Sequence record: NC_041974.1
Reading direction: 5' to 3' (one strand)
DNA length: 64,000 nt
The notes beneath the pieces were generated by a model. That model did not search any database and was not told the origin of the DNA. It worked only from the letters and a program-made list of their open reading frames with translations. How positions within the stretch are numbered: position 1 is the first letter of the stretch; every line of letters starts with the position of its first letter. Below, one piece after another: positions 2,827-15,960 of this stretch. The position numbers and the translations under genes were made by a program.

Positions 2827-3474
2827 ATGTCAGTCATGACAGGTGGTTTTGGCGCAATCAATGCGCTAATGTCCAACGGCCGCCCGACTCAGGGTGCCAT
2901 GGAGTATTTTAACAATCAGTATCAGGGCATGCTGCAAGCAGCGCAGCAAGTGGGTAGTGTAGCGATGCAGCAGATCTATCAGATCGCAACACACACCTAT
3001 GAAAACCTGATGCAGACCCGTCCGTGGGAACTGGCAGAAGCAGCGTTGCGTCAAACAGTGCACATGTTTGACCCGAACACGGTTCGTCAGCTTCTCAACC
3101 TGGCTGATATGCAAACCGCCAAACCGATCATGCAGCGGTGGGTGATGGCGCAACCGGATATCCGTCAGATGTATCATCAGCAGCGTATCGATGGTTACAG
3201 CGAAACGTATGAAGATGCCCAACCAGGGATGGTAGGTGCAGACCATTATGATTATCGTCGTGCAGCAAACGGCATGTTGCAGTTTGCACACACTGAAGAG
3301 GTGCCGATGGCGTCTTGGCAGGCGACGACCTATTATGAGCGTCTGGTAGAAGGTGATAACGAACTGTCGTTCCATGAGAAGCGTGACATCCATGTAACCT
3401 GGGATGCGTGTCTGAATCTGATGAACACACAGGCGTATGATCCGACCTCCATCTTCAACATGAAGCTGGCGTAA
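2827..3474 (+). CDS. Conserved phiKZ-like core protein (positional candidate for phiKZ gp59/Imp3 type)
   Basis: SD AGGAG. The segment VMAQPDIRQMYHQQRIDGYSETYED...HYDYRR resembles a Chimalliviridae core family from memory. The gp59 assignment is synteny only. Confidence 0.5.
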   Translation: MSVMTGGFGAINALMSNGRPTQGAMEYFNNQYQGMLQAAQQVGSVAMQQIYQIATHTYENLMQTRPWELAEAALRQTVHMFDPNTVRQLLNLADMQTAKPIMQRWVMAQPDIRQMYHQQRIDGYSETYEDAQPGMVGADHYDYRRAANGMLQFAHTEEVPMASWQATTYYERLVEGDNELSFHEKRDIHVTWDACLNLMNTQAYDPTSIFNMKLA

Positions 3475-3482
3475 GTTAATCG

Positions 3483-3510
3483 GAGGAGGGGTAGCCCTCC
3501 TCTTATGCCG
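3483..3510 (+). terminator. Hairpin GAGGAGGG-gtag-CCCTCCTC followed by TTATGCCG
   Basis: Perfect 8-bp inverted repeat after the stop at 3474. Confidence 0.7.
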
Positions 3511-3522
3511 TTTGAGGGTAGC

Positions 3523-3747
3523 ATGGCAAAAAAGGAACTCACGATGAAGCGACTTCAGATAGACATCTCTGAACAGGGCTTTAGCAAACTCAATGCACTC
3601 AAGGTGAAAATGGAAACCACTGCCATGGGTAGCGTTGTCAGCCGCGCCTTATCGATTACCGATCGTTTGTTCACCGCCAAGGAGAAAGGCAGTAAGATCC
3701 TGATCGTGGATAAAGATGGTAATGTCACCGAAATCGAATTACTGTAG
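3523..3747 (+). CDS. Ribbon-helix-helix (CopG/Arc-like) DNA-binding protein
   Basis: SD GAGGGT before ATG 3523. Alternating strand KRLQIDIS, helix EQGFSKLNALKVKM, second helix MGSVVSRALSITDRL; pattern read by eye. Confidence 0.6.
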   Translation: MAKKELTMKRLQIDISEQGFSKLNALKVKMETTAMGSVVSRALSITDRLFTAKEKGSKILIVDKDGNVTEIELL

Positions 3748-3755
3748 AGGTTAAC

Positions 3756-3983
3756 ATGGCTTGGTCCAAACGCCGTGCAAAGAAACGCATCATTCACTTA
3801 CGTGGTTTTCATTATCGTGTTCAATCACGTAGTATCGCAATCTGGGAACAGTATCGCGAATATCATCAAAATCGACCATTTGGATCTGGCGTTGGTTTAT
3901 TGATGTTACTTGACCCTGAAACTGGTTGTCCAATAGGAGCTCATCGTGGCCTTAAGCAAAACAAAAATAAAGCGTCGTACTAA
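3756..3983 (+). CDS. Small basic hypothetical protein
   Basis: SD GAGG, 75 aa, co-oriented. Confidence 0.55.
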   Translation: MAWSKRRAKKRIIHLRGFHYRVQSRSIAIWEQYREYHQNRPFGSGVGLLMLLDPETGCPIGAHRGLKQNKNKASY

Positions 3984-4230
3984 TGCGCTGTATAACTACA
4001 AAACGCTGGTTGAACGCATTAGCTATAAATGCATGATAGCCCACATCGATGCTCAGGGTATCAAGCTTGAATTGAACCGCACGGGTTCGTCAATTAAAAG
4101 TGAAGACATTCCTGCTGCAAAAGAAGCCCGTCTTGCATTGAAACGCGAAATCGTCCGTCTGCGGAATATCCAGGGGCGTCGTCGTATCGTGAATGCCGGT
4201 AAGATCAAAGCGGCAATCAGCCAGTATTAA
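3946..4230 (+). CDS. Small basic hypothetical protein
   Basis: SD AGGAG before GTG 3946; followed by a terminator. Confidence 0.65.
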   Translation: MALSKTKIKRRTNALYNYKTLVERISYKCMIAHIDAQGIKLELNRTGSSIKSEDIPAAKEARLALKREIVRLRNIQGRRRIVNAGKIKAAISQY

Positions 4231-4233
4231 TAG

Positions 4234-4263
4234 AAGGGACTTCGGTCCCTTTATTTTTTTTTT
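4234..4263 (+). terminator. Intrinsic terminator (AAGGGAC-ttcg-GTCCCTT + T tract)
   Basis: 7-bp stem, UUCG tetraloop, long T run. Confidence 0.9.
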
Positions 4264-4289
4264 GTCTTGAATAATGAAATTTTTACGCT

Positions 4290-4326
4290 GTAGAAAATCT
4301 TAGACCTATATAACGGCACTGATAGA
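4290..4326 (+). promoter_or_regulatory. Putative early (virion RNAP) promoter, repeat copy 1
   Basis: GTAGAAAATCTTAGACCTATATAACGGCACTGATAGA aligns without gaps to copies at 4896 and 27215; intergenic, upstream of an accessory gene. Confidence 0.7.
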
Positions 4327-4354
4327 GTAATCTAAATTAACTTACGAGGTTATC

Positions 4355-4885
4355 ATGAAAAACACTACTTTTCTAATTGAGACCCTGAAACGTACCTTGG
4401 AAGAGCTGGACCAGGCAACGTTATCAACTGAAGAAAAAATTGAATTAACCACCATGGTTGAGAAAGAACATTTTGCTAAGCTGTTCGGTGTCCGCGCAGA
4501 AGAAACCACTCAGTTAAGTGAGCGCGATTTCTCTAAACTGACCGGTTATCAGTACAACAGTGTTTACGCGGGGTTAGATTTGGTTGGTAATTTTGACTGG
4601 GTGATCACGGCGGATGGCGCAGTCGTAACAAGAGAAATGCCTCATCACGGCAGTAACCATTGGTTGCCACCGCACAGGCAATTTATATTCAGACTGATCG
4701 ATGAAGGTCGTGAAATATTTAATGAAGGCACTAGACTGCTTGTTATCAGAATTGAGAACACCATCACCAAAGAGGTCTTTTCAATTAACTTTGAAGTTGC
4801 TGATATTCAAATCGGCAGTGCGGTTGTTAAAATGGTTGAGCGTTATCTGTTCGATTATTACAGGGTCAGCGTCAAGAAACTGTAA
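4355..4885 (+). CDS. Hypothetical early protein
   Basis: SD GAGG, 176 aa, behind promoter repeat. Confidence 0.75.
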   Translation: MKNTTFLIETLKRTLEELDQATLSTEEKIELTTMVEKEHFAKLFGVRAEETTQLSERDFSKLTGYQYNSVYAGLDLVGNFDWVITADGAVVTREMPHHGSNHWLPPHRQFIFRLIDEGREIFNEGTRLLVIRIENTITKEVFSINFEVADIQIGSAVVKMVERYLFDYYRVSVKKL

Positions 4886-4895
4886 AATATGAGTT

Positions 4896-4932
4896 GCAGA
4901 AAATCTCAGACCTATATGACTGGGGTGATAAA
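4896..4932 (+). promoter_or_regulatory. Putative early promoter, repeat copy 2
   Basis: GCAGAAAATCTCAGACCTATATGACTGGGGTGATAAA. Confidence 0.7.
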
Positions 4933-4988
4933 GAGTAGTGAATACTCTTAACCCCTAACCCAATTAACCTTAAGTATGGAGTAGTATC

Positions 4989-5279
4989 ATGACTGTAACT
5001 TTCTCTCAGCAAATGCAGGTTGTCGAATCTATCGCTGTGATGCAGGAAAAAGCAATGGAACTGCAAGTTGCTACCAAAGCGTGTTACGACGAAGTCACCC
5101 GACTGGCCAACCGACTGGCTGACATCAACGATCCACTCGGCTTTCAGAAAGCCTATGAAGAATATCGTGCCAAGCTGGCAGAAGCGGATGTATTAGCCGA
5201 TGCTACTCGCCTGGCTTACAACATGTCAGACGCTGCACTGAAAACCATCCTGGGTGAAGCTAACCCAACCTTTCATTAA
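4989..5279 (+). CDS. Small helical/coiled-coil hypothetical protein
   Basis: SD GGAG, 96 aa, A/E/K/L-rich. Confidence 0.7.
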   Translation: MTVTFSQQMQVVESIAVMQEKAMELQVATKACYDEVTRLANRLADINDPLGFQKAYEEYRAKLAEADVLADATRLAYNMSDAALKTILGEANPTFH

Positions 5280-5318
5280 TAGTTAATTACTCATCGTCAT
5301 TACGCCTCGGAGAAACTC

Positions 5319-5528
5319 ATGAGCGATTTTATTAGCAACCTGTTCGAAATCGCTATTGCAGTTTCTTCTGTAGTGGCGATGGTTAAATTGATTAAATCTG
5401 ATAATGCCTATATTGCAGAAACAGTTCGTATCATCGATGCCTGCGCTTCTTTACAGGAAGGGCAAGTAATTCAGGGCGAAGTGGTTAACACCAAAGCCCA
5501 CACAACCAACTTATACATCACCCATTAA
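5319..5528 (+). CDS. Small membrane-anchored hypothetical protein
   Basis: SD GGAG; hydrophobic N-terminal stretch LFEIAIAVSSVVAMVKLI. Confidence 0.6.
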   Translation: MSDFISNLFEIAIAVSSVVAMVKLIKSDNAYIAETVRIIDACASLQEGQVIQGEVVNTKAHTTNLYITH

Positions 5529-9136: not shown

Positions 9137-9907
9137 ATGGCTGGTCCACAGCGTCAATTTAAAGCTCGTGAAAAATCTTACTTGAGCGAGTACTCGATGA
9201 ACCTTCAGGGCCCGGTGCAAGCTGGCGCTCAGTTCCCTGCTGAATTCCGCATGGCCTTTGCAGCCAACAAAGTGGCCATTCAGGTTGAAACCAAAAACCG
9301 CGATAACAAAAATAACGGTCGCTTTGAAATCGTTGTTCCTTATCTGGGCGCTATCGGTGTGCTGAATACGATCGACAAGCTTATTCAGGACAAAGCACGC
9401 AGTAAGCTGCAATACAAAGTGAAAGACTTCGTTTACTTCGGTAAAGGTAACAAGTCTGACTCGCCAATGATCAAAGGCACCCTGACTGTAGGGCGTGATA
9501 ACGAAGGCTGTCTCTATATCGGCATGTCCGGTAAAGACATCACCCCAATCAAATTCATCTTCACCCTGCCGGCGCATGATGAACTGTGCGATGACTCAGG
9601 TCAACGTCTGGGTGAAGCTGAGCACTCTGAGTTTGCTGCGAAGAACTTCGTGGTCGGTTACCTGGGCCTGCTGCCAGTGGTGATGGGTATTCACTATACC
9701 CCACCTGAACCGAAGAACCCAGATGGCGGTAATGGCGGTGGCGGTGGTCAAGGCGGTGGCGGCTGGGGCGGTAATGGCGGCGGGAACCGTGGCGGTGGTA
9801 ATGGCGGGGGAAACCAGTACAGCCAAGGCGGCAATCAGGGCGGCGGGAACGCCTCTGGTTCTGGTAGCAGCGGCGGCGGTGACTTCGCAGATGACCTGCC
9901 TTTCTAA
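9137..9907 (+). CDS. chmC: ChmC-like phage-nucleus-associated nucleic-acid-binding protein (phiKZ gp67/Imp6 type)
   Basis: SD AGGAG. Beta-rich N-terminal domain plus G/N/Q-rich disordered tail. Sits upstream of the gp68-type subunit and PicA, the position known for ChmC. Confidence 0.7.
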   Translation: MAGPQRQFKAREKSYLSEYSMNLQGPVQAGAQFPAEFRMAFAANKVAIQVETKNRDNKNNGRFEIVVPYLGAIGVLNTIDKLIQDKARSKLQYKVKDFVYFGKGNKSDSPMIKGTLTVGRDNEGCLYIGMSGKDITPIKFIFTLPAHDELCDDSGQRLGEAEHSEFAAKNFVVGYLGLLPVVMGIHYTPPEPKNPDGGNGGGGGQGGGGWGGNGGGNRGGGNGGGNQYSQGGNQGGGNASGSGSSGGGDFADDLPF

Positions 9908-10915: not shown

Positions 10916-12460
10916 ATGATGTTTAAGTACACCACCAAATCGACCTCTGAGAAGGTATGGTTAAACACAATCATAGTTGTCAGTCGTCATGGCGAAGAGA
11001 TTGTGTTTAACGAAAACAACTTCTTCAAGTCGGAAGAGAAGGACCATAAAGGAACCTTCGACGAACTGAATCTCTATCTCTTGCGTTGCCTGAGTAACGA
11101 GCAACGTGATCGGATGTTTGAGTTCTATAAGCAAATCAGTTATATCCTGAAAACGGAACTGTCGGTCACGAAGGTCCTTCTGCCAAAGTTGCAGCCTTTG
11201 GTTAAAGGGATCTACGACCTGGTTAGCTTAAGCGACCTGAACGTCTTCATGTATGAAAACAAACTGACGCACATCCCGAACAGCGTACTGGATACCATCC
11301 CGTCCTCGAAAGAGTACCCGACGATGACCACGTATGTGAAAGCGGATTACGTCAAGCTGGTTAACCTGTCGGTGTTGTTGCATCTGATGGCGCCGATCAT
11401 TGCGGACTATGTCAGCAAGGTCAGTGAGTCAACCGGCAAGCAGTTTAAAGAACACGCCGCCTTACCGTTATTGGAATACACCAACATCATGTATTCTGAT
11501 GAGATGGTCAAGCTGCGTAACTTCGTGACCGCCAACTGCAGTAAAAAGCCAGTGCCGTTATCAGCCACCTTAGAAGGGATGTCAGAAGAGTCGTTCCCGG
11601 ATTGGATGCTGGCGTCGGTCATTGCACGTAAGCTGTGTATCAACCATGTACGGCGTGGGGATGAGAACGGGCATCTGGTTGCTGCGGTGTTTGCCTACAT
11701 CAACTACAACATCAAACTGGATGGTAAGTTTGGTGGCGGGGTCATGCCAAAGAAAGAGCGTCGGGGTCTGGGAGAAGATGAACGCGAGAAAGCGGTCATT
11801 GATAACTGGAAGATGAAAGAGGATGTGGACAAGATCGATATCTTAGCCTGTGCTGTTGGCTTTGATGATCCGGTTGCTGCTGCCAAATTCATTGAGCCTG
11901 ACATCGATCCAAACATGGTGATCCGTTGCCTGAATGCGATTCCACAAGCCTGGAACTTCAGCATGACTCGTCATCAGAGCATTCTGTTGCAGTGGGTAGT
12001 GGGTGAGCTTCTGCCGCATATAGGTGATACGTATGTGCCGCCGTTGACCGTTGAGTATTACGATTACGATGTCTGCGTGAAGTTGGTCGGGATTGCACAA
12101 GCGGTACTGTGGCATCGGGGTTATCCGAAGCTTGCAGTGTTTGCTGCGACTTATCCGTCTGAAGTGGATGCCGGGGGGATGCCGAATGCCGTGATGCCAT
12201 TAGAACTGAAAGTGATGGCAGAGCTGGAAGCGTATTACGGTAATGTGCGTCTGGGTAAACGTCAGGACAGCAGCGATGGCTTGGTGCATAAAACCATCAA
12301 CACCATGGTTACCTCATTGTTAGAAGATGATTATCAGGTCGTAGGCCCTGATGAATTGTTAGCGTTATCTGGGGTGGTAGATTTCGAACGTCGAATCGTC
12401 ATTCCTGAAAGCCTATATTACGATATTGCTGGCTACATTCGTTTCTTAGCCACTCGTTAA
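10916..12460 (+). CDS. nvRNAP fifth (promoter-specificity, sigma-like) subunit, phiKZ gp68 type
   Basis: 514 aa; position between ChmC-like and PicA-like genes matches phiKZ gp67-gp68-gp69. Confidence 0.7.
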   Translation: MMFKYTTKSTSEKVWLNTIIVVSRHGEEIVFNENNFFKSEEKDHKGTFDELNLYLLRCLSNEQRDRMFEFYKQISYILKTELSVTKVLLPKLQPLVKGIYDLVSLSDLNVFMYENKLTHIPNSVLDTIPSSKEYPTMTTYVKADYVKLVNLSVLLHLMAPIIADYVSKVSESTGKQFKEHAALPLLEYTNIMYSDEMVKLRNFVTANCSKKPVPLSATLEGMSEESFPDWMLASVIARKLCINHVRRGDENGHLVAAVFAYINYNIKLDGKFGGGVMPKKERRGLGEDEREKAVIDNWKMKEDVDKIDILACAVGFDDPVAAAKFIEPDIDPNMVIRCLNAIPQAWNFSMTRHQSILLQWVVGELLPHIGDTYVPPLTVEYYDYDVCVKLVGIAQAVLWHRGYPKLAVFAATYPSEVDAGGMPNAVMPLELKVMAELEAYYGNVRLGKRQDSSDGLVHKTINTMVTSLLEDDYQVVGPDELLALSGVVDFERRIVIPESLYYDIAGYIRFLATR

Positions 12461-12495: not shown

Positions 12496-14013
12496 ATGTT
12501 ACCTACCCAAAACATTCAGTTCGAAGGCTATGTTGAGAAAGCTGCTATCTGCCGTACACCAGCTTATCAGGACATGTACCGTCGACCGTACAGCATGAAT
12601 ATCAGTCAGGACACCGCATCCGTTATTGGTAACATGAGTGCCGGTGTGGATTATTCTCGTGAGCGTTTAGCGCCGATTGCCGCATCGGTCATTGCGCCAC
12701 AGACTTACGTTGAATCGGTTTGTAACGTACCAGAGGGCTGGGGTTCTGAGCGTTGTCTCTTCATTCTGAAGATCGTTCACGGTCGTCCGGGTGACCAGGG
12801 TCTGAACAAACGTGTGCAGTATCTGACCGGCTACACCAGTCACATGGGCATGATGCCAAGTCAGATGCGTGCGAATGATGTTGTTGTTGATGACAACATG
12901 CGTCTGTTCTTTAACACCAGTATGCTGTTTAACGAAACCAGCCATATCGATGGCTATGGTCGTAAGCTCGTCACCGCCATGCCGTTGATGGCAAGTCAGT
13001 TGGTAATGGGTCAGCACGGTGGGGTGCATGGTCATAACGATCGTACGTTGCGTCCTGAAGATGTTTACTCAGCAATCAATGTTGGACAGCTGATTCAGCA
13101 GAACAACCAGTATGATCAAAGCCGTGGTACCAATGGTCCGATTGGTCAGCTGTATGATGGTCGTACTGCTTTCCAACCTGGTCAGCCGTATAAGCTTTCT
13201 CAGCTGAATAACCTGGTGCCTTCAAACTACCTCAGTAAAGTGCTGACCGGCGCAGCCACCGAACAGCTGACCTTAGGTGGTCAACGTGCAAACCCAGCGG
13301 ACACCAGCAATCAGATCGCAACTGGCCTGAACGAAGGTTATCTGTCTAACGACCTGACCCTGCAGCACATCCTGGATCGCACCGGTCTGCGTGAAAACTG
13401 CTCAATCACATTTGGTGAATTGCGTCGTATTCTGCCGAACATTGATGCACCGGGTATTTTGACCAAAGCGGGTATGGAAGGTGTCGGTACTGGTCAGGTT
13501 GCCGGTGCAGTAGGTGGTGCTGGTTCTGAACATCATCAGGGTTCGAACTATGAAACCGTGATTGCCAACATGCTAAACAATGTGACCACTGCACTGATGA
13601 TGGATCTGATGATCGGTGAGATTCATTGTAATGGCGGTAACATGACCGTAGCCGATGTGGCGACTGGTACAATGAGCGGTCAGTTCCTGTTGAACACACC
13701 GTATGCAACTTCCTTCGTGGATGGTCGTGATGCGGTGGCGTTGTGTGAATCGTTTAAGCTGCGTCTGGTGCGTGAGTTCCTGTCAAGCTTTACCGGCCAC
13801 AACCATGTGCCAATCGGTTTTGCAATCCATGCAAGTCTGATGGCCGAAACGGTTATTGATGTCTCTTACAATAACCAACCGAAGATTCGCTTCGTGTTCC
13901 CGGTCTTTGCGAACGCGTCGTATACCCCGATTATCACTGGCGATCAGAACACTCTGAACTCCATTGCCGTACACACACGTGAACTGGTCCAGCAGCTGAC
14001 CAACGTCTTTTAA
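12496..14013 (+). CDS. picA: Phage-nucleus protein import factor PicA/Imp1 (phiKZ gp69 type)
   Basis: 505 aa; SD AGGAG; follows the gp68-type gene. N-terminal YQDMYRRPY...FILKI...YLTGYT pattern recalled for this family. Confidence 0.7.
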   Translation: MLPTQNIQFEGYVEKAAICRTPAYQDMYRRPYSMNISQDTASVIGNMSAGVDYSRERLAPIAASVIAPQTYVESVCNVPEGWGSERCLFILKIVHGRPGDQGLNKRVQYLTGYTSHMGMMPSQMRANDVVVDDNMRLFFNTSMLFNETSHIDGYGRKLVTAMPLMASQLVMGQHGGVHGHNDRTLRPEDVYSAINVGQLIQQNNQYDQSRGTNGPIGQLYDGRTAFQPGQPYKLSQLNNLVPSNYLSKVLTGAATEQLTLGGQRANPADTSNQIATGLNEGYLSNDLTLQHILDRTGLRENCSITFGELRRILPNIDAPGILTKAGMEGVGTGQVAGAVGGAGSEHHQGSNYETVIANMLNNVTTALMMDLMIGEIHCNGGNMTVADVATGTMSGQFLLNTPYATSFVDGRDAVALCESFKLRLVREFLSSFTGHNHVPIGFAIHASLMAETVIDVSYNNQPKIRFVFPVFANASYTPIITGDQNTLNSIAVHTRELVQQLTNVF

Positions 14014-14027
14014 GGAAAAGATAAACC

Positions 14028-15572
14028 ATGACAACTCCACTTATTAACTATTACACGGGCTTCCTGGAATCGACGGGCGCTGTGATTGATCAGTCCACCG
14101 GTGTGGTGAGCTATGAACGTTCCACCGGTTTAAAGCCGGTGTTAATTGATGGCAAAGAGCTGATCCTGCCCATCCGTGCGTTTCAGGATAAGCCGGACTG
14201 GACGCGTTATGTGCCATTCCATCCGCTGTCTGAATCGATTGCTCGTGGTGAATCGGAAGTGCTGCAGAAAGCCAAAGAGCTTATCAGTCTGAAGCTGTTC
14301 CTGAAATATGCGGAACTGTCTGAAGCGCTGCTGATGCTGGCAGTGAACTCTGAATCGCAGGCGAAGCTCACCCCTACCCAGATGAAGTTCCTGGAAGGGC
14401 TGGGTGATGCGGATGAGAAAACGGTTGAGAACTTCTCAAAGATCCTGGCGAAATCCAAAGCGACCTTTGAAGGTGGTGAGAACCGTTGTCTGGTGTCGTT
14501 GTTCCTGAAACGTGGCGGTACACTCAACGGGCAGAAGTTTGCCCGTCTGTGTGTTGTAGCGTTCCCGTACTACGAAGCGCTGTGTAAGATCGAAAACGAA
14601 CCTGCGGATAAGCGCGTGGTGTTTGGTGTGCCATTGCGTGCCAAAGACATCAAAGTGCTGAAGCGTCTGCATGAAGTGATCGTACCGAACAGCGATGACG
14701 GGATCTACTCGATCGGGACTAACGTACAGACTGCGCCGTACTGGGGTGCATTGATGATGACTTACGTCAACATCCTGAACCAGTTCAACAGCGTAATCAA
14801 ACCGTTCTCGAAAGTGATCAAATCGCTGAAGGCGGTTGATACCTCGTGGGATGTGGGTGATGAGTTGCAACAGTTCCGTGCTGAGATTCCACCGATGCCG
14901 TATAATGAAGGTGCAGATTCCAGCAAACCAGCTGAAACAACCCAGCCTCTGCAGACCCAACAGCAGCCTGTTGCGACGCAGCCACAAACCATCCCACAGC
15001 CAACCGGTAATCTGGTACAGCAGCCAGCAACCATCCAGCAGGCGCCGAGCTTTAACGGTAATCAGAACCAGTCCAGCACAGTCACCCATCCGCCAGCTCA
15101 CAACGTTAAACCATCTAACGGTGGCGGTGTGAACTTCGCTGATGCGATGAACAAGTCGGGCATGGGTATGATGCCACAAATGCAGATGCCGGGTATGATG
15201 CCGCAGATGTATCCTCAGCAGGGTTACCCACAGCAGCAGATGCCAATGTATCCGCAACAGCAAATGTATCCTCAGATGCAGATGCAAATGCCGATGCAGC
15301 AGCTTCCAATGCCACCGGTCTCTCAGCCGCAGGGTCAGCAGCAATTCCCGCAGCAGATGTATTATCAAAATGGTCAGTTGCCAATGCCGCCGGTTAGCCA
15401 GCAGCAACAGCAAGGTTACCCACAGCAGGGCATGTATCCTCAGCAGCAGATGATGCAGCCTCAAATGTACCCGCAGATGCAAATGCCTGGCATGATGCCA
15501 CAAATGCAGATGCCGGGTATGATGCAGCAGGGTTACCCGCAACAGCCACAGATGTTCCAGTTCGGGCGTTAA
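14028..15572 (+). CDS. phiKZ gp70-type core protein with long Q/M/P/Y-rich C-terminal low-complexity domain
   Basis: Synteny after PicA; globular first ~290 aa, then TQP-rich linker and MPQ/QQGYPQQ repeats. Confidence 0.7.
   Translation: MTTPLINYYTGFLESTGAVIDQSTGVVSYERSTGLKPVLIDGKELILPIRAFQDKPDWTRYVPFHPLSESIARGESEVLQKAKELISLKLFLKYAELSEALLMLAVNSESQAKLTPTQMKFLEGLGDADEKTVENFSKILAKSKATFEGGENRCLVSLFLKRGGTLNGQKFARLCVVAFPYYEALCKIENEPADKRVVFGVPLRAKDIKVLKRLHEVIVPNSDDGIYSIGTNVQTAPYWGALMMTYVNILNQFNSVIKPFSKVIKSLKAVDTSWDVGDELQQFRAEIPPMPYNEGADSSKPAETTQPLQTQQQPVATQPQTIPQPTGNLVQQPATIQQAPSFNGNQNQSSTVTHPPAHNVKPSNGGGVNFADAMNKSGMGMMPQMQMPGMMPQMYPQQGYPQQQMPMYPQQQMYPQMQMQMPMQQLPMPPVSQPQGQQQFPQQMYYQNGQLPMPPVSQQQQQGYPQQGMYPQQQMMQPQMYPQMQMPGMMPQMQMPGMMQQGYPQQPQMFQFGR
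15168..15524 (+). repeat. 33-bp exact direct repeat (15168-15200 and 15492-15524) bracketing the Q-rich domain
   Basis: ATGATGCCACAAATGCAGATGCCGGGTATGATG occurs twice, 324 nt (108 codons) apart. Confidence 0.9.
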
Positions 15573-15586
15573 TCTATAAATCTGAT

Positions 15587-15625
15587 CGGCATAAGGAGAG
15601 GCTACGGCCTCTCCTCTTTCAGAGT
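15587..15625. terminator. Bidirectional terminator between convergent genes, flanked by CGGCATAA
   Basis: AGGAGAGGC-tacg-GCCTCTCCT stem. Confidence 0.8.
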
Positions 15626-15960
15626 CATTTTTTATTTGAGTTGTAGAGATCTCTAATAGATGACAGAAGTGAACTGTTTTCATCTATTAGAAGAATGTCC
15701 GTTGTAATGACATCCCATTTAAAGGGATTCATGATGTTGTTGATTCGCATAGTTAACCAATGCATGTGATAAGGAACGCCGTATTCCAGTAGTAGCATGC
15801 GAAAGTCACCACGTTCTTCGTACTGTTCAAGAGGGGTAGGGGGAGTAAACTTAGTTGCATTCGCCCGAAGCAAATCGAGATGATGCACCAGGACCTGACG
15901 AAAGCCGTGATCTTGAAACAGCTTATCGGTCGGGTGTTTGATTTCGTTGCTGACTCGCAT
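15625..15960 (-). CDS. Small conserved phiKZ-like protein on the opposite strand (possible LysM/gp53-like baseplate fold)
   Basis: 111 aa; GDFRMLLLEYGVPYHMHWLTMRINN pattern; own terminator at about 15600. Fold is tentative. Confidence 0.6.
   Translation of the reverse strand: MRVSNEIKHPTDKLFQDHGFRQVLVHHLDLLRANATKFTPPTPLEQYEERGDFRMLLLEYGVPYHMHWLTMRINNIMNPFKWDVITTDILLIDENSSLLSSIRDLYNSNKK

What the first reader, a model, noticed from the sequence alone, without database searches (positions are those of the whole stretch)
14900..15572. Prion-like Q/M/P/Y low-complexity domain on the gene next to PicA, bracketed by a 33-bp in-frame direct repeat
Seen: the last ~135 aa are almost only Q, M, P, Y and G (MMPQMQMPG, QQGYPQQ, MYPQQQM, LPMPPVSQ repeats), with no charged residue until the final Arg. 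An exact 33-bp repeat at 15168 and 15492, 324 nt apart, would allow in-frame deletion or expansion of 108 aa. Established: uncharged Q/Y-rich domains drive condensates in eukaryotes, and FG-type disordered domains gate nuclear pores. The gene is syntenic with the import factor PicA and ChmC. Inference: it could form a condensate or selective gel at phage-nucleus import sites, with length tunable by recombination.
Basis: partly seen in the sequence, partly recalled or inferred. Interest (0 to 1): 0.66.

Follow-up and report, generated by a model that had tools for sequence, protein, structure and literature searches.

The report
Low-complexity tail on phage-nucleus shell protein
A core protein of nucleus-forming jumbo phages (the phiKZ gp70 / PhiPA3 gp64 family) carries a real, strongly conserved disordered tail made almost only of Q, M, P, G and Y, and its chemical "flavour" matches the disordered parts of the nuclear-shell protein ChmA and two other phage proteins, which suggests these segments stick to each other at the shell.

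Summary
ORF 14028-15572 (514 aa) of this Erwinia jumbo phage (Simmy50/RAY group) is the orthologue of phiKZ gp70 / PhiPA3 gp64, a core protein that associates with the nuclear shell in PhiPA3. It has a confidently folded 295-aa N-domain with no known fold and a 220-aa disordered tail. The tail ends in 136 residues of Q, M, P, G and Y without one charged residue. An exact 34-nt in-frame repeat lies at 15168 and 15492.

The tail is not junk. Among sister phages it takes almost only synonymous changes and never changes length, and the two repeat copies evolve in concert. Recombination therefore happens, but "tunable length" is not supported.

157 of 158 proteins examined carry such a tail, in lineage-specific flavours: uncharged Q/M/P/G, Arg/Asp-rich, or Gly/Leu-rich. 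New here: in each genome examined the same flavour appears in the disordered ends and a loop of the shell protein ChmA, in the gp124-family protein, and in some lineages in PicA. Almost no other protein has it, and ChmC keeps its own N/G tail.

Most likely the tail is a cohesive low-complexity module that holds the protein in a matching fuzzy layer on the shell. A selective gel at import sites remains possible but untested.

The parts
14028..15572 (+). CDS, 514 aa: orthologue of RAY gp245, phiKZ gp70, PhiPA3 gp64, 201phi2-1 gp126 and Goslar_173 (PHROG 3520; no Pfam family)
14028..14912 (+). Folded N-terminal domain, aa 1-295 (pLDDT about 97). It includes the invariant FHPLSESIARGESEV signature and ends in the conserved IPPMPYNEG cap (aa 287-295). 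No known fold.
   Evidence: AlphaFold2 model; alignments; fold and profile searches
14913..15128 (+). Disordered P/Q/T/A/N-rich linker, aa 296-367 (pLDDT 38-57)
15129..15155 (+). Short conserved motif VNFADAMNK (aa 368-376), family pattern [VIL]-x-[FWM]-x-x-[hydrophobic], about 70 residues after the N-domain. Candidate linear binding motif.
   Evidence: a strict pattern is found in 88 of 157 representatives
15162..15569 (+). Uncharged Q/M/P/G/Y low-complexity region, aa 379-514 (23% Met, 35% Gln, 19% Pro)
15168..15201 (+). Copy 1 of the exact 34-nt in-frame direct repeat (MMPQMQMPGMM)
15492..15525 (+). Copy 2 of the exact 34-nt direct repeat. It evolves in concert with copy 1 (CCG GGT / CCA GGG haplotypes).
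15417..15461 (+). 15-aa peptide YPQQGMYPQQQMMQP (aa 464-478), identical to aa 17-31 of gp4 of the same phage (outside the window). 38 of 45 nt are identical.
   Evidence: 0 of 2000 shuffles reach 15; maximum 9
15552..15569 (+). C-terminal end MFQFGR. Family-wide the last residue is hydrophobic (I/V/L/F/Y in 114 of 157) or Arg, after a Gly/Arg/Ser-rich stretch. Candidate docking end.
15595..15614 (+). 8-bp GC-rich hairpin with a 4-nt loop, followed by a T-rich stretch. Terminator-like, between this gene and the convergent small gene 15625-15960.
   Evidence: read directly; it does not pass the T-run rule of the scan
12496..14013 (+). PicA/Imp1 orthologue (PHROG 3141), directly upstream
10916..12460 (+). 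phiKZ gp68-type nvRNAP subunit by position (PHROG 3209)
   Evidence: gene order as described in 10.1101/2024.03.27.586873
9137..9907 (+). ChmC orthologue (256 aa) with an N/G-rich tail ending DFADDLPF
   Evidence: tail as described in PMC11077065

Best explanation
The gene encodes the Agricanvirus member of the phiKZ gp70 / PhiPA3 gp64 family, a core protein of nucleus-forming phages that sits at the ChmA nuclear shell.

Shown: it has a compact 295-aa N-domain of unknown fold plus a 220-aa disordered tail. The tail consists of a linker, a short conserved motif, a 136-aa uncharged Q/M/P/G/Y low-complexity region and a hydrophobic/Arg C-terminal end. The tail is under strong purifying selection for sequence and length.

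Inferred: the low-complexity region is a cohesive, multivalent 'sticker and spacer' module. Met, Tyr and Phe act as stickers. Gln, Gly and evenly spaced Pro act as spacers that keep it disordered and non-amyloid. It engages, like with like, the equally flavoured disordered N-extension, loop and C-tail of ChmA, and the matching segments of the gp124-family protein (gp4 here) and, in some lineages, PicA. This would hold these proteins together in a fuzzy low-complexity layer on the shell, where import (PicA) and transcription-linked factors act. The two short conserved motifs probably add specific docking contacts.
For: - Homology and synteny.
- Shell localisation of the PhiPA3 orthologue and its recovery in ChmB pull-downs: PMC10643120.
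- Disorder: pLDDT below 57 from residue 300 on, against about 97 before it.
- Selection: across five sister genomes the LCR has 25 synonymous changes and 1 replacement (M419V in Ea35-70). pS is 0.03-0.16 with pN 0 in the four comparisons computed. There are no indels in 16 close genome records or in 4 runs. gp4 of the same genomes does show indels.
- Universality: 157 of 158 proteins examined have a tail of 115-298 aa. Hydrophobic residues are spaced more evenly than random in 97% of them.
- Flavour matching with ChmA: the charged fraction of the tail against the ChmA ends gives r 0.97 in 11 phages. The same holds for an internal ChmA loop and for 3 more phages.
- Flavour matching with the gp124 family, the gene directly downstream of the gp123-type nvRNAP beta gene (one small ORF intervenes in RAY).
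- Exclusivity: R/D-rich windows occur in 4 of 707 (Xoo-sp14) and 3 of 384 (SPLA10) ORFs, Q/M-rich windows in 5 of 611 (RAY), and G/L-rich windows in 2 of 667 (Asesino: PicA and the gp70 homologue).
- Control: ChmC tails stay N/G-rich in the R/D lineages.
- A 15-aa peptide is identical between this tail and gp4.
- PicA and gp64 homologues share the C-terminal LGLL/LGLV in PhiPA3 and PS119XW.
Against: - No experiment on this protein or its tail exists.
- The flavour switches may be as few as one to three events: the backbone of the family tree is unresolved. The correlation therefore carries little statistical weight, although three or four unlinked genes switch together.
- phiKZ gp70 did not bind Imp1 in co-expression (10.1101/2024.03.27.586873).
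- ASO knock-down of PHIKZ070 gave no listed phenotype (PMC12571901), so the protein may be dispensable in phiKZ under laboratory conditions.
- Aromatic residues in this particular tail are not spaced more evenly than chance (p 0.35).
- Which face of the shell the ChmA segments and this tail point to is unknown.
- The complex prediction could not be run.
Confidence: 0.45

Rival explanations
1. Flexible tether. The low-complexity region is mainly an entropic spacer of constrained length. It presents two short docking motifs (the VNFADAM-type motif and the hydrophobic/Arg C-terminal end) to a partner such as a pocket of ChmA. Its composition matters little beyond staying disordered and soluble.
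For: Both motifs are conserved across tails of very different flavour. The C-terminal residue is hydrophobic in 114 of 157 representatives. PicA and the gp64 homologues of PhiPA3 and PS119XW end in the same LGLL/LGLV. ChmA itself assembles by docking terminal segments on neighbours (10.1101/2022.02.14.480162). Length is invariant among sister phages.
Against: A mere spacer would not need zero amino-acid replacements at pS up to 0.16. It would also not need a flavour matched in three or four proteins and nearly absent elsewhere in each genome.
Confidence: 0.25
2. One reading: a condensate or selective gel specifically at PicA import sites, FG-nucleoporin-like, with length tuned by recombination between the 34-nt repeats.
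For: Adjacent to PicA in every genome examined. In Asesino, PicA itself carries a G/L tail of the same flavour as its neighbour, and these are the only two such ORFs of 667. The Xoo-sp14 PicA tail is R/D-flavoured. The repeat copies do recombine. Import selects cargo by surface residues of folded proteins, with no terminal signal sequence (PMC12908238).
Against: No length variant in 16 genome records and 4 runs. There is only one FG dipeptide. phiKZ gp70 did not co-purify with Imp1 (10.1101/2024.03.27.586873). PhiPA3 gp64 was reported at the shell, with no mention of a single punctum like that of PicA (PMC10643120, PMC12908238). RAY-group PicA has no low-complexity tail.
Confidence: 0.12
3. 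Transcription-linked or nucleic-acid-linked role inside the nucleus. The protein works with the non-virion RNA polymerase and the gp124-family protein. The tail acts like eukaryotic Q-rich or R/D-rich (RS-like) activation or RNA-handling domains.
For: The gene lies in the nvRNAP gene block. The flavour is shared with the gene that follows nvRNAP beta, whose phiKZ knock-down changes phage transcription (PMC12571901). phiKZ gp70 was treated as a nuclear protein (10.1101/2024.03.27.586873). The best, weak fold matches are RNA-binding hibernation factors (Z 5.7). One phiKZ-like record annotates the homologue as Med15-like.
Against: The uncharged flavours cannot bind nucleic acid electrostatically. 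The N-domain is near neutral. The fold matches are below the level that means anything. PhiPA3 gp64 is at the shell, not in the lumen (PMC10643120).
Confidence: 0.1
4. Chemistry of methionine: the Met-rich stretch binds Cu(I) or other soft metals, or acts as a redox-sensitive switch or sink through Met oxidation.
For: 23% Met with many MxM and MxxM spacings. Met-rich tails recur in the RAY, phiKZ, PS119XW and pEt-SU groups. Met-rich copper sites and the redox-sensitive Met-rich domain of yeast Pbp1 are known (own knowledge).
Against: Whole lineages have tails without any Met (R/D and G/L flavours), so this cannot be the family's function. There are no His or Cys partners.
Confidence: 0.03
5. 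Neutral by-product: a slippage-prone repeat tract tolerated at the end of the gene, without function.
For: Sequence of the tail turns over quickly between genera.
Against: Only 1 replacement against 25 synonymous changes and no indel among sister phages. A tail is present in 157 of 158 proteins examined. Residues are non-randomly spaced.
Confidence: 0.03

Closest known systems
PhiPA3 gp64 / phiKZ gp70 / 201phi2-1 gp126 (uncharacterised nuclear-shell-associated core protein of Chimalliviridae)
   Same: Homologous N-domain (tblastn E 1e-24 to 1e-30, PHROG 3520). Same position between PicA and the nvRNAP beta gene. A disordered low-complexity tail follows the N-domain.
   Different: The tail here is longer and richer in Q/P/Y. 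Nothing has been published on the tails of this family in the library searched. Localisation and phenotype are known only for the Pseudomonas phages.
ChmC (PhiPA3 gp61 / phiKZ gp67 / Imp6), whose N/G-rich C-terminal tail drives RNA-protein condensates (PMC11077065)
   Same: Encoded in the same conserved block, shell-associated, with a folded N-domain plus a C-terminal low-complexity tail. It is precedent that such a tail in this system is needed for condensation in vitro.
   Different: ChmC has a Whirly RNA-binding fold and an N/G tail with an acidic end, and that tail keeps the same flavour in all lineages. The gp70-family tail changes flavour with ChmA and has no known RNA-binding domain.
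Cohesive FG domains of nucleoporins (GLFG type, such as Nup98/Nup100; own knowledge)
   Same: Long, uncharged, Q/N/G/P-rich disordered domain with interspersed hydrophobic residues, on a protein at the boundary of a nucleus-like compartment.
   Different: No FG repeats (3 Phe, one FG). Met and Tyr take the place of Phe. No pore, no transport receptors and no evidence of a permeability barrier.
Met-rich low-complexity domain of yeast Pbp1/ataxin-2, and P/Q(/M)-rich self-assembling proteins such as amelogenin and cereal prolamins (own knowledge)
   Same: Composition: abundant Met, Gln and Pro, few or no charges, self-association without stable folding.
   Different: No sequence relationship. Redox control or nanosphere formation is untested here.
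Arg-rich mixed-charge (R/D, R/E, RS-like) domains of nuclear-speckle proteins (own knowledge)
   Same: The R/D-rich tails of the Xoo-sp14, SPN3US-like, FBKp24, 2050HW and Ralstonia-phage homologues look like these cohesive domains.
   Different: This applies to other lineages of the family, not to the tail in this window.

Membership tests
phiKZ gp70 / PhiPA3 gp64 family (PHROG 3520) | Sequence homology of the N-terminal domain of about 290 aa | tested here: met
   PHROG 3520 E 4.5e-147. tblastn hits on PHIKZ070, PhiPA3 064 and 201phi2-1 gp126. 1651 cluster representatives at E<=1e-3.
phiKZ gp70 / PhiPA3 gp64 family (PHROG 3520) | Position directly after PicA/Imp1 and before the nvRNAP beta gene | tested here: met
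   Same order in the window and in 16 other phages. PicA identity confirmed.
phiKZ gp70 / PhiPA3 gp64 family (PHROG 3520) | Localisation at the phage nuclear shell during infection | not testable with these tools
   Shown only for PhiPA3 gp64 (PMC10643120).
Yeast-type prion-like domain | Q/N-rich, few charged residues, disordered | tested here: met
   35% Q+N and no charged residue in 136 aa (only the terminal Arg). pLDDT below 57.
Yeast-type prion-like domain | Low proline content and amyloid-forming propensity | tested here: not met
   19% Pro, more evenly spaced than in 99.98% of shuffles. PLAAC/PAPA were not available.
FG-nucleoporin cohesive domain | Repeated FG (GLFG/FxFG) motifs | tested here: not met
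   3 Phe and one FG dipeptide in the tail.
FG-nucleoporin cohesive domain | Uncharged disordered domain with evenly spread hydrophobic stickers | tested here: inconclusive
   In the window tail, all hydrophobics give p 0.09 and aromatics p 0.35. Family-wide, hydrophobics are more even than random in 97% of 157 tails.
FG-nucleoporin cohesive domain | Anchored at a transport channel and forming a selective barrier | not testable with these tools
   No localisation or permeability data for this protein.
ChmC-type condensate tail | Whirly RNA-binding domain plus an N/G-rich tail with an acidic end | tested here: not met
   No PDB fold match. The tail is Q/M/P/Y and ends in FGR. The true ChmC is ORF 9137-9907.
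Repeat-mediated length-variable (contingency-type) locus | In-frame direct repeats long enough for recombination | tested here: met
   34-nt exact repeat, 324 nt apart. Concerted evolution of the copies.
Repeat-mediated length-variable (contingency-type) locus | Length polymorphism among isolates or within populations | tested here: not met
   All 16 close genome records have 1545 nt. No joints or indels in contigs of 4 runs. Contigs cannot exclude rare variants.

The most novel reading that the evidence does not exclude
Nucleus-forming phages use a lineage-specific low-complexity 'flavour code'. The disordered segments of ChmA, the gp70-family tail, the gp124-family segment and, in some lineages, the PicA tail would together form a cohesive, selective low-complexity phase on the protein shell. 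This would be a functional analogue of the FG phase of nuclear pores. It would recruit its own members and help decide which folded proteins or mRNAs pass, and its chemistry has been swapped wholesale (uncharged Q/M/G, Arg/Asp, Gly/Leu) during phage evolution.
Probability: 0.15. Interest if true: 0.9.

Novelty: new variant of a known kind. Interest (0 to 1): 0.64.

Why it matters
How proteins and mRNA cross the closed ChmA lattice is the main open question of phage-nucleus biology. PicA/Imp1 selects cargo by surface features, and no pore is known. ChmC showed that one shell-associated protein uses a low-complexity tail to form condensates.

This work shows that a second core shell-associated protein always carries such a tail. 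It also shows that the tail's chemistry is matched to the disordered parts of the shell protein itself and of two further proteins, one genome after another. That turns a vague idea (a 'fuzzy layer on the shell') into direct tests: delete the tail, swap flavours between lineages, mix purified segments. It also points to the gp124 family and the disordered parts of ChmA as members of the same set.

If the tails turn out to be mere tethers, the shared C-terminal ends of PicA and gp64 still suggest how accessory proteins dock on the shell.

Tried and rejected
- Fold of the N-domain: Foldseek against PDB gave nothing at E<=0.001. VIA-align against 48,161 chains gave a best Z of 5.7 to ribosome hibernation factors over about 90 residues, below the level that means anything. 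BFVD returned only uncharacterised jumbo-phage homologues. A profile search of PDB sequences found nothing. Pfam found nothing.
- ESM Atlas gave Sec16-like clusters at 0.82-0.84, which is within the range of shuffled proteins. I treat this as a composition effect.
No complex test was made.
- The search for related loci in IMG/VR found only 3 loci. The word-index search found only 11 proteins. The exhaustive representative search was therefore used.
- Sequencing runs: all holders are kept as assembled contigs and none is on record as RNA, so expression and rare length variants could not be tested.
- RAY gp4 could not be tied to the gp124 family (PHROG 15010) by sequence: BLASTP E 0.05-0.16, no PHROG hit. 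The link rests on position after the nvRNAP beta gene and on similar architecture.
- The ChmA Pfam model and my ChmA profile missed or barely found ChmA in Asesino and D3. Those phages add little to the ChmA comparison.
- A tree of the N-domains did not resolve how often the R/D flavour arose: 1 to 3 changes.
- The terminator scan did not accept the hairpin at 15595-15614.
- The first 8 of 13 earlier notes of this scan on this genome, as shown, concern other features and did not bear on this finding.
Full report
**What the window is.** The ORF 14028-15572 is 100% identical to Erwinia phages Simmy50 and Special G. It is 98-99.8% identical to the other Agricanvirus phages (RAY, Ea35-70, Deimos-Minion and others). 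In RAY it is gp245, annotated as hypothetical. RAY is a nucleus-forming phage (10.1101/2023.02.24.529968).

**The observation.**
- The ORF gives 514 aa. Residues 379-514 are Q47 M31 P26 G11 Y10 plus nine others.
- No D, E, K, R or H occurs between K376 and the terminal R514.
- The exact repeat is 34 nt, at 15168 and 15492, 324 nt apart and in frame.
- No codon shuffle of the tail (0 of 5000) reaches that length. With the peptide fixed, 2.6% of synonymous shuffles do.
- The window is the second most compositionally simple stretch among 991 ORFs of RAY.
- The reading frame is certain: 12 of 13 variable sites in the tail among six genomes are third codon positions of this frame.

**Identity of the gene and its neighbours.**
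- PHROG 3520 matches at E 4.5e-147; Pfam has nothing.
- tblastn finds the N-terminal 295 residues or so in 271 phage records, all jumbo phages. Among them are PHIKZ070, PhiPA3 gp64, 201phi2-1 gp126 and Goslar_173.
- An exhaustive search finds 1651 cluster representatives.
- In all 17 phages inspected the gene lies directly after the PicA/Imp1 gene and before the nvRNAP beta gene, usually with a small convergent gene between.
- Window ORF 12496-14013 hits phiKZ gp69 and PhiPA3 gp63, which are PicA.
- ORF 9137-9907 hits the gene two upstream of PicA in phiKZ, PhiPA3 and Goslar. It carries the N/G-rich tail with acidic end described for ChmC in PMC11077065.

**What is published on the family.**
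- PhiPA3 gp64 is one of six proteins that localise to the nuclear shell. It was recovered in ChmB pull-downs (PMC10643120).
- phiKZ gp70 did not co-purify with Imp1, whereas gp67 did (10.1101/2024.03.27.586873).
- Two antisense oligomers against PHIKZ070 have no phenotype entry, and 070 is absent from the hit table, while PicA and ChmC score strongly (PMC12571901, Table 1 and supplement 5).
- PHIKZ070 shows few transposon insertions, like its essential neighbours (PMC12676376, supplements 2-3; my reading of the columns).
- I found nothing on the tails of this family.

**Anatomy.**
- AlphaFold2 with 128 homologues gives pLDDT of about 97 for residues 1-295 and below 57 after residue 300.
- The N-domain has no match in the PDB by Foldseek, by VIA-align (best Z 5.7, hibernation-factor-like, not meaningful) or by profile search. 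In BFVD it matches only family members.
- The conserved IPPMPYNEG stretch belongs to the folded part.
- The tail holds a P/Q/T-rich linker, a short conserved motif (VNFADAM here), the low-complexity region, and a conserved kind of C-terminal end. That end is a hydrophobic last residue in 114 of 157 representatives, or h-x-h-x-Arg as here.

**Selection and the repeat.**
- Against five sister genomes the low-complexity region shows pS 0.03-0.16 with pN 0 in the four comparisons computed. Across all five comparisons there are 25 synonymous differences and one replacement (M419V in Ea35-70), and no indel.
- All 16 close genome records keep 1545 nt.
- Contigs from two further isolates and two metagenomes show no joint or indel; assemblies simply break at the repeat.
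- By contrast gp4 of the same phages, which has a similar Q/M region, shows a QQ insertion and a 4-aa deletion.
- A two-site synonymous haplotype (CCG GGT or CCA GGG) is the same in both repeat copies in the window, MadMel and Ea35-70 (one form) and in Deimos-Minion and Bosolaphorus (the other form). It is mixed in RAY. The copies have therefore exchanged sequence.
- Recombination occurs, but deletion or expansion products are not seen. The tail is held at fixed length and sequence.

**The tail across the family.**
- Of the 158 proteins examined (the 150 best representatives plus close relatives), 157 have 115-298 residues after the N-domain.
- 124 of these tails are uncharged (16 with at least 10% Met), 29 are intermediate and 4 are Arg/Asp/Glu-rich.
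- Named phages show the same range:
  - Q/M/P/G in the RAY group, SNUABM_37, phiKZ, PhiPA3, PS119XW and pEt-SU.
  - N/G/Y/F in 201phi2-1.
  - R/D/E in Xoo-sp14, FBKp24, 2050HW, SPLA10 and RsoM3USA.
  - G/L/S in Asesino.
- Hydrophobic residues are spread more evenly than random in 97% of the tails (mean z -1.1). In the window tail the prolines are spread strikingly evenly (p 0.0002) but the aromatics are not.

**Flavour matching, the new result.**
- The disordered N-extension and C-tail of ChmA have the same flavour as the gp70-family tail in the same phage. They are R/D-rich in Xoo-sp14, RsoM3USA, FBKp24 and SPLA10 (and 2050HW). They are uncharged in phiKZ, PhiPA3, 201phi2-1, PS119XW, RAY, SNUABM_37, pEt-SU and phiKT1028.
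- The charged fractions correlate with r 0.97 over 11 phages.
- An internal ChmA loop follows the same rule. In RAY it is a Q/M-rich insert resembling the gp245 tail.
- Another RAY protein with this flavour is gp4. Its N-terminus shares an identical 15-aa peptide with the gp245 tail.
- gp4 lies just after the gp123-type nvRNAP beta gene (a small ORF, gp3, intervenes). The gene in that position in phiKZ (gp124), PhiPA3, Goslar, RsoM3USA, SPLA10 and Xoo-sp14 also carries a low-complexity segment of the lineage's flavour.
- Genome-wide scans show how exclusive this is:
  - R/D windows occur in 4 of 707 ORFs of Xoo-sp14 and 3 of 384 of SPLA10.
  - Q/M windows occur in 5 of 611 ORFs of RAY.
  - Each set includes ChmA, the gp70 homologue and the gp124-position gene.
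- In Asesino, G/L windows occur in only 2 of 667 ORFs: the gp70 homologue and PicA next to it.
- The PicA tail is R/D-flavoured in Xoo-sp14. In PhiPA3 and PS119XW, PicA and the gp64 homologue end in the same LGLL or LGLV.
- ChmC is the control: its tail stays N/G-rich in the R/D lineages.
- The weakness is that the family tree does not resolve how many independent switches there were, 1 to 3 for R/D. The pattern is striking but not a statistical proof.

**Reading.** Most likely (0.45) the tail is a cohesive low-complexity module that associates with the matching disordered parts of ChmA, gp4 and, in some lineages, PicA at the shell. The short motifs would add specific contacts. The main rival (0.25) is a tether that only presents those motifs. 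The link to PicA gains some support from Asesino and Xoo-sp14, while the tunable length does not. A role in transcription with nvRNAP and gp124 (0.10), methionine chemistry (0.03) and a neutral tract (0.03) are less likely.

**Limits.** No expression data and no experiment were available. The complex prediction could not be run. Proteins from annotated phage records could not be used for folds. Statements about FG domains, Pbp1, prolamins, amelogenin, mixed-charge domains and Met-rich copper sites rest on my own knowledge.

Noticed in passing
outside the window: RAY (G001) 2926-5409, locus L028:27-2507; Simmy50 KU886223.1 2926-5397: gp4 (827 aa, PHROG 11639) has a Q/M/P/Y-rich N-terminal 240 aa or so. 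It shares an identical 15-aa peptide with the gp245 tail, with 38 of 45 nt identical. It lies just after the gp123-type nvRNAP beta gene (a small ORF, gp3, intervenes), in the position of phiKZ gp124, whose knock-down alters phage transcription. Sequence homology to the gp124 family (PHROG 15010) could not be shown.
   Followed up: partly
outside the window: RAY (G001) 181696-183831, locus L038:10696-12831: The RAY-group ChmA (711 aa) has a 95-aa Q/P/N/T-rich N-terminal extension and a Q/M-rich internal loop at about aa 345-372. In other lineages the same loop and both termini are R/D-rich or Q/P/G-rich, in step with the gp70-family tail.
   Followed up: partly
window 9137-9907 (+): The ChmC orthologue (256 aa) has a G/N/Q tail ending DFADDLPF. 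The tail flavour and the aromatic or hydrophobic C-terminal end after acidic residues (DDLPF, DDISF, NDVPW, DTLPF, NDIPW) are kept in five distant phages, including those whose other tails are R/D-rich.
   Followed up: partly
Asesino KX397364.2 26270-28030 and 28049-29413 (loci L097, L014): In Asesino the PicA homologue (586 aa) ends in a G/L-rich low-complexity tail of the same kind as its downstream gp70-family neighbour. These are the only two ORFs of 667 with such windows.
   Followed up: partly
loci L003, L008 (PhiPA3, PS119XW): ends of the PicA and gp64-type genes: PicA and the gp64 homologue end in the same tetrapeptide: LGLL in PhiPA3 and LGLV in PS119XW. In 201phi2-1 they end in LGLL and MGLI. 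This may be a shared C-terminal docking end.
   Followed up: no
window 14436-15683 (-): A 415-aa antisense ORF rich in L, H and R overlaps the tail. It is the complement of the CAG/ATG/CCG-rich coding strand and is not supported by the pattern of substitutions.
   Followed up: yes
window 15595-15614: A perfect 8-bp GC-rich hairpin with a 4-nt loop and a T-rich stretch lies between the gene's stop and the convergent small gene 15625-15960. It is probably a terminator, although the consensus scan did not call it.
   Followed up: partly
Serratia phage 2050HW MF285618.1 234089-235900 (loci L059, L062, L063): The ChmA gene of this record matches the ChmA profile in four pieces in different frames, which suggests frameshift errors in the deposited sequence or a broken gene.
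   Followed up: no
RAY (G001) 140546-141754 (locus L036:7546-8751): A 402-aa protein (PHROG 11391) has a weaker Q/M/N-rich stretch. It is the fourth of the five RAY ORFs with Q/M-rich windows. Function unknown.
   Followed up: no
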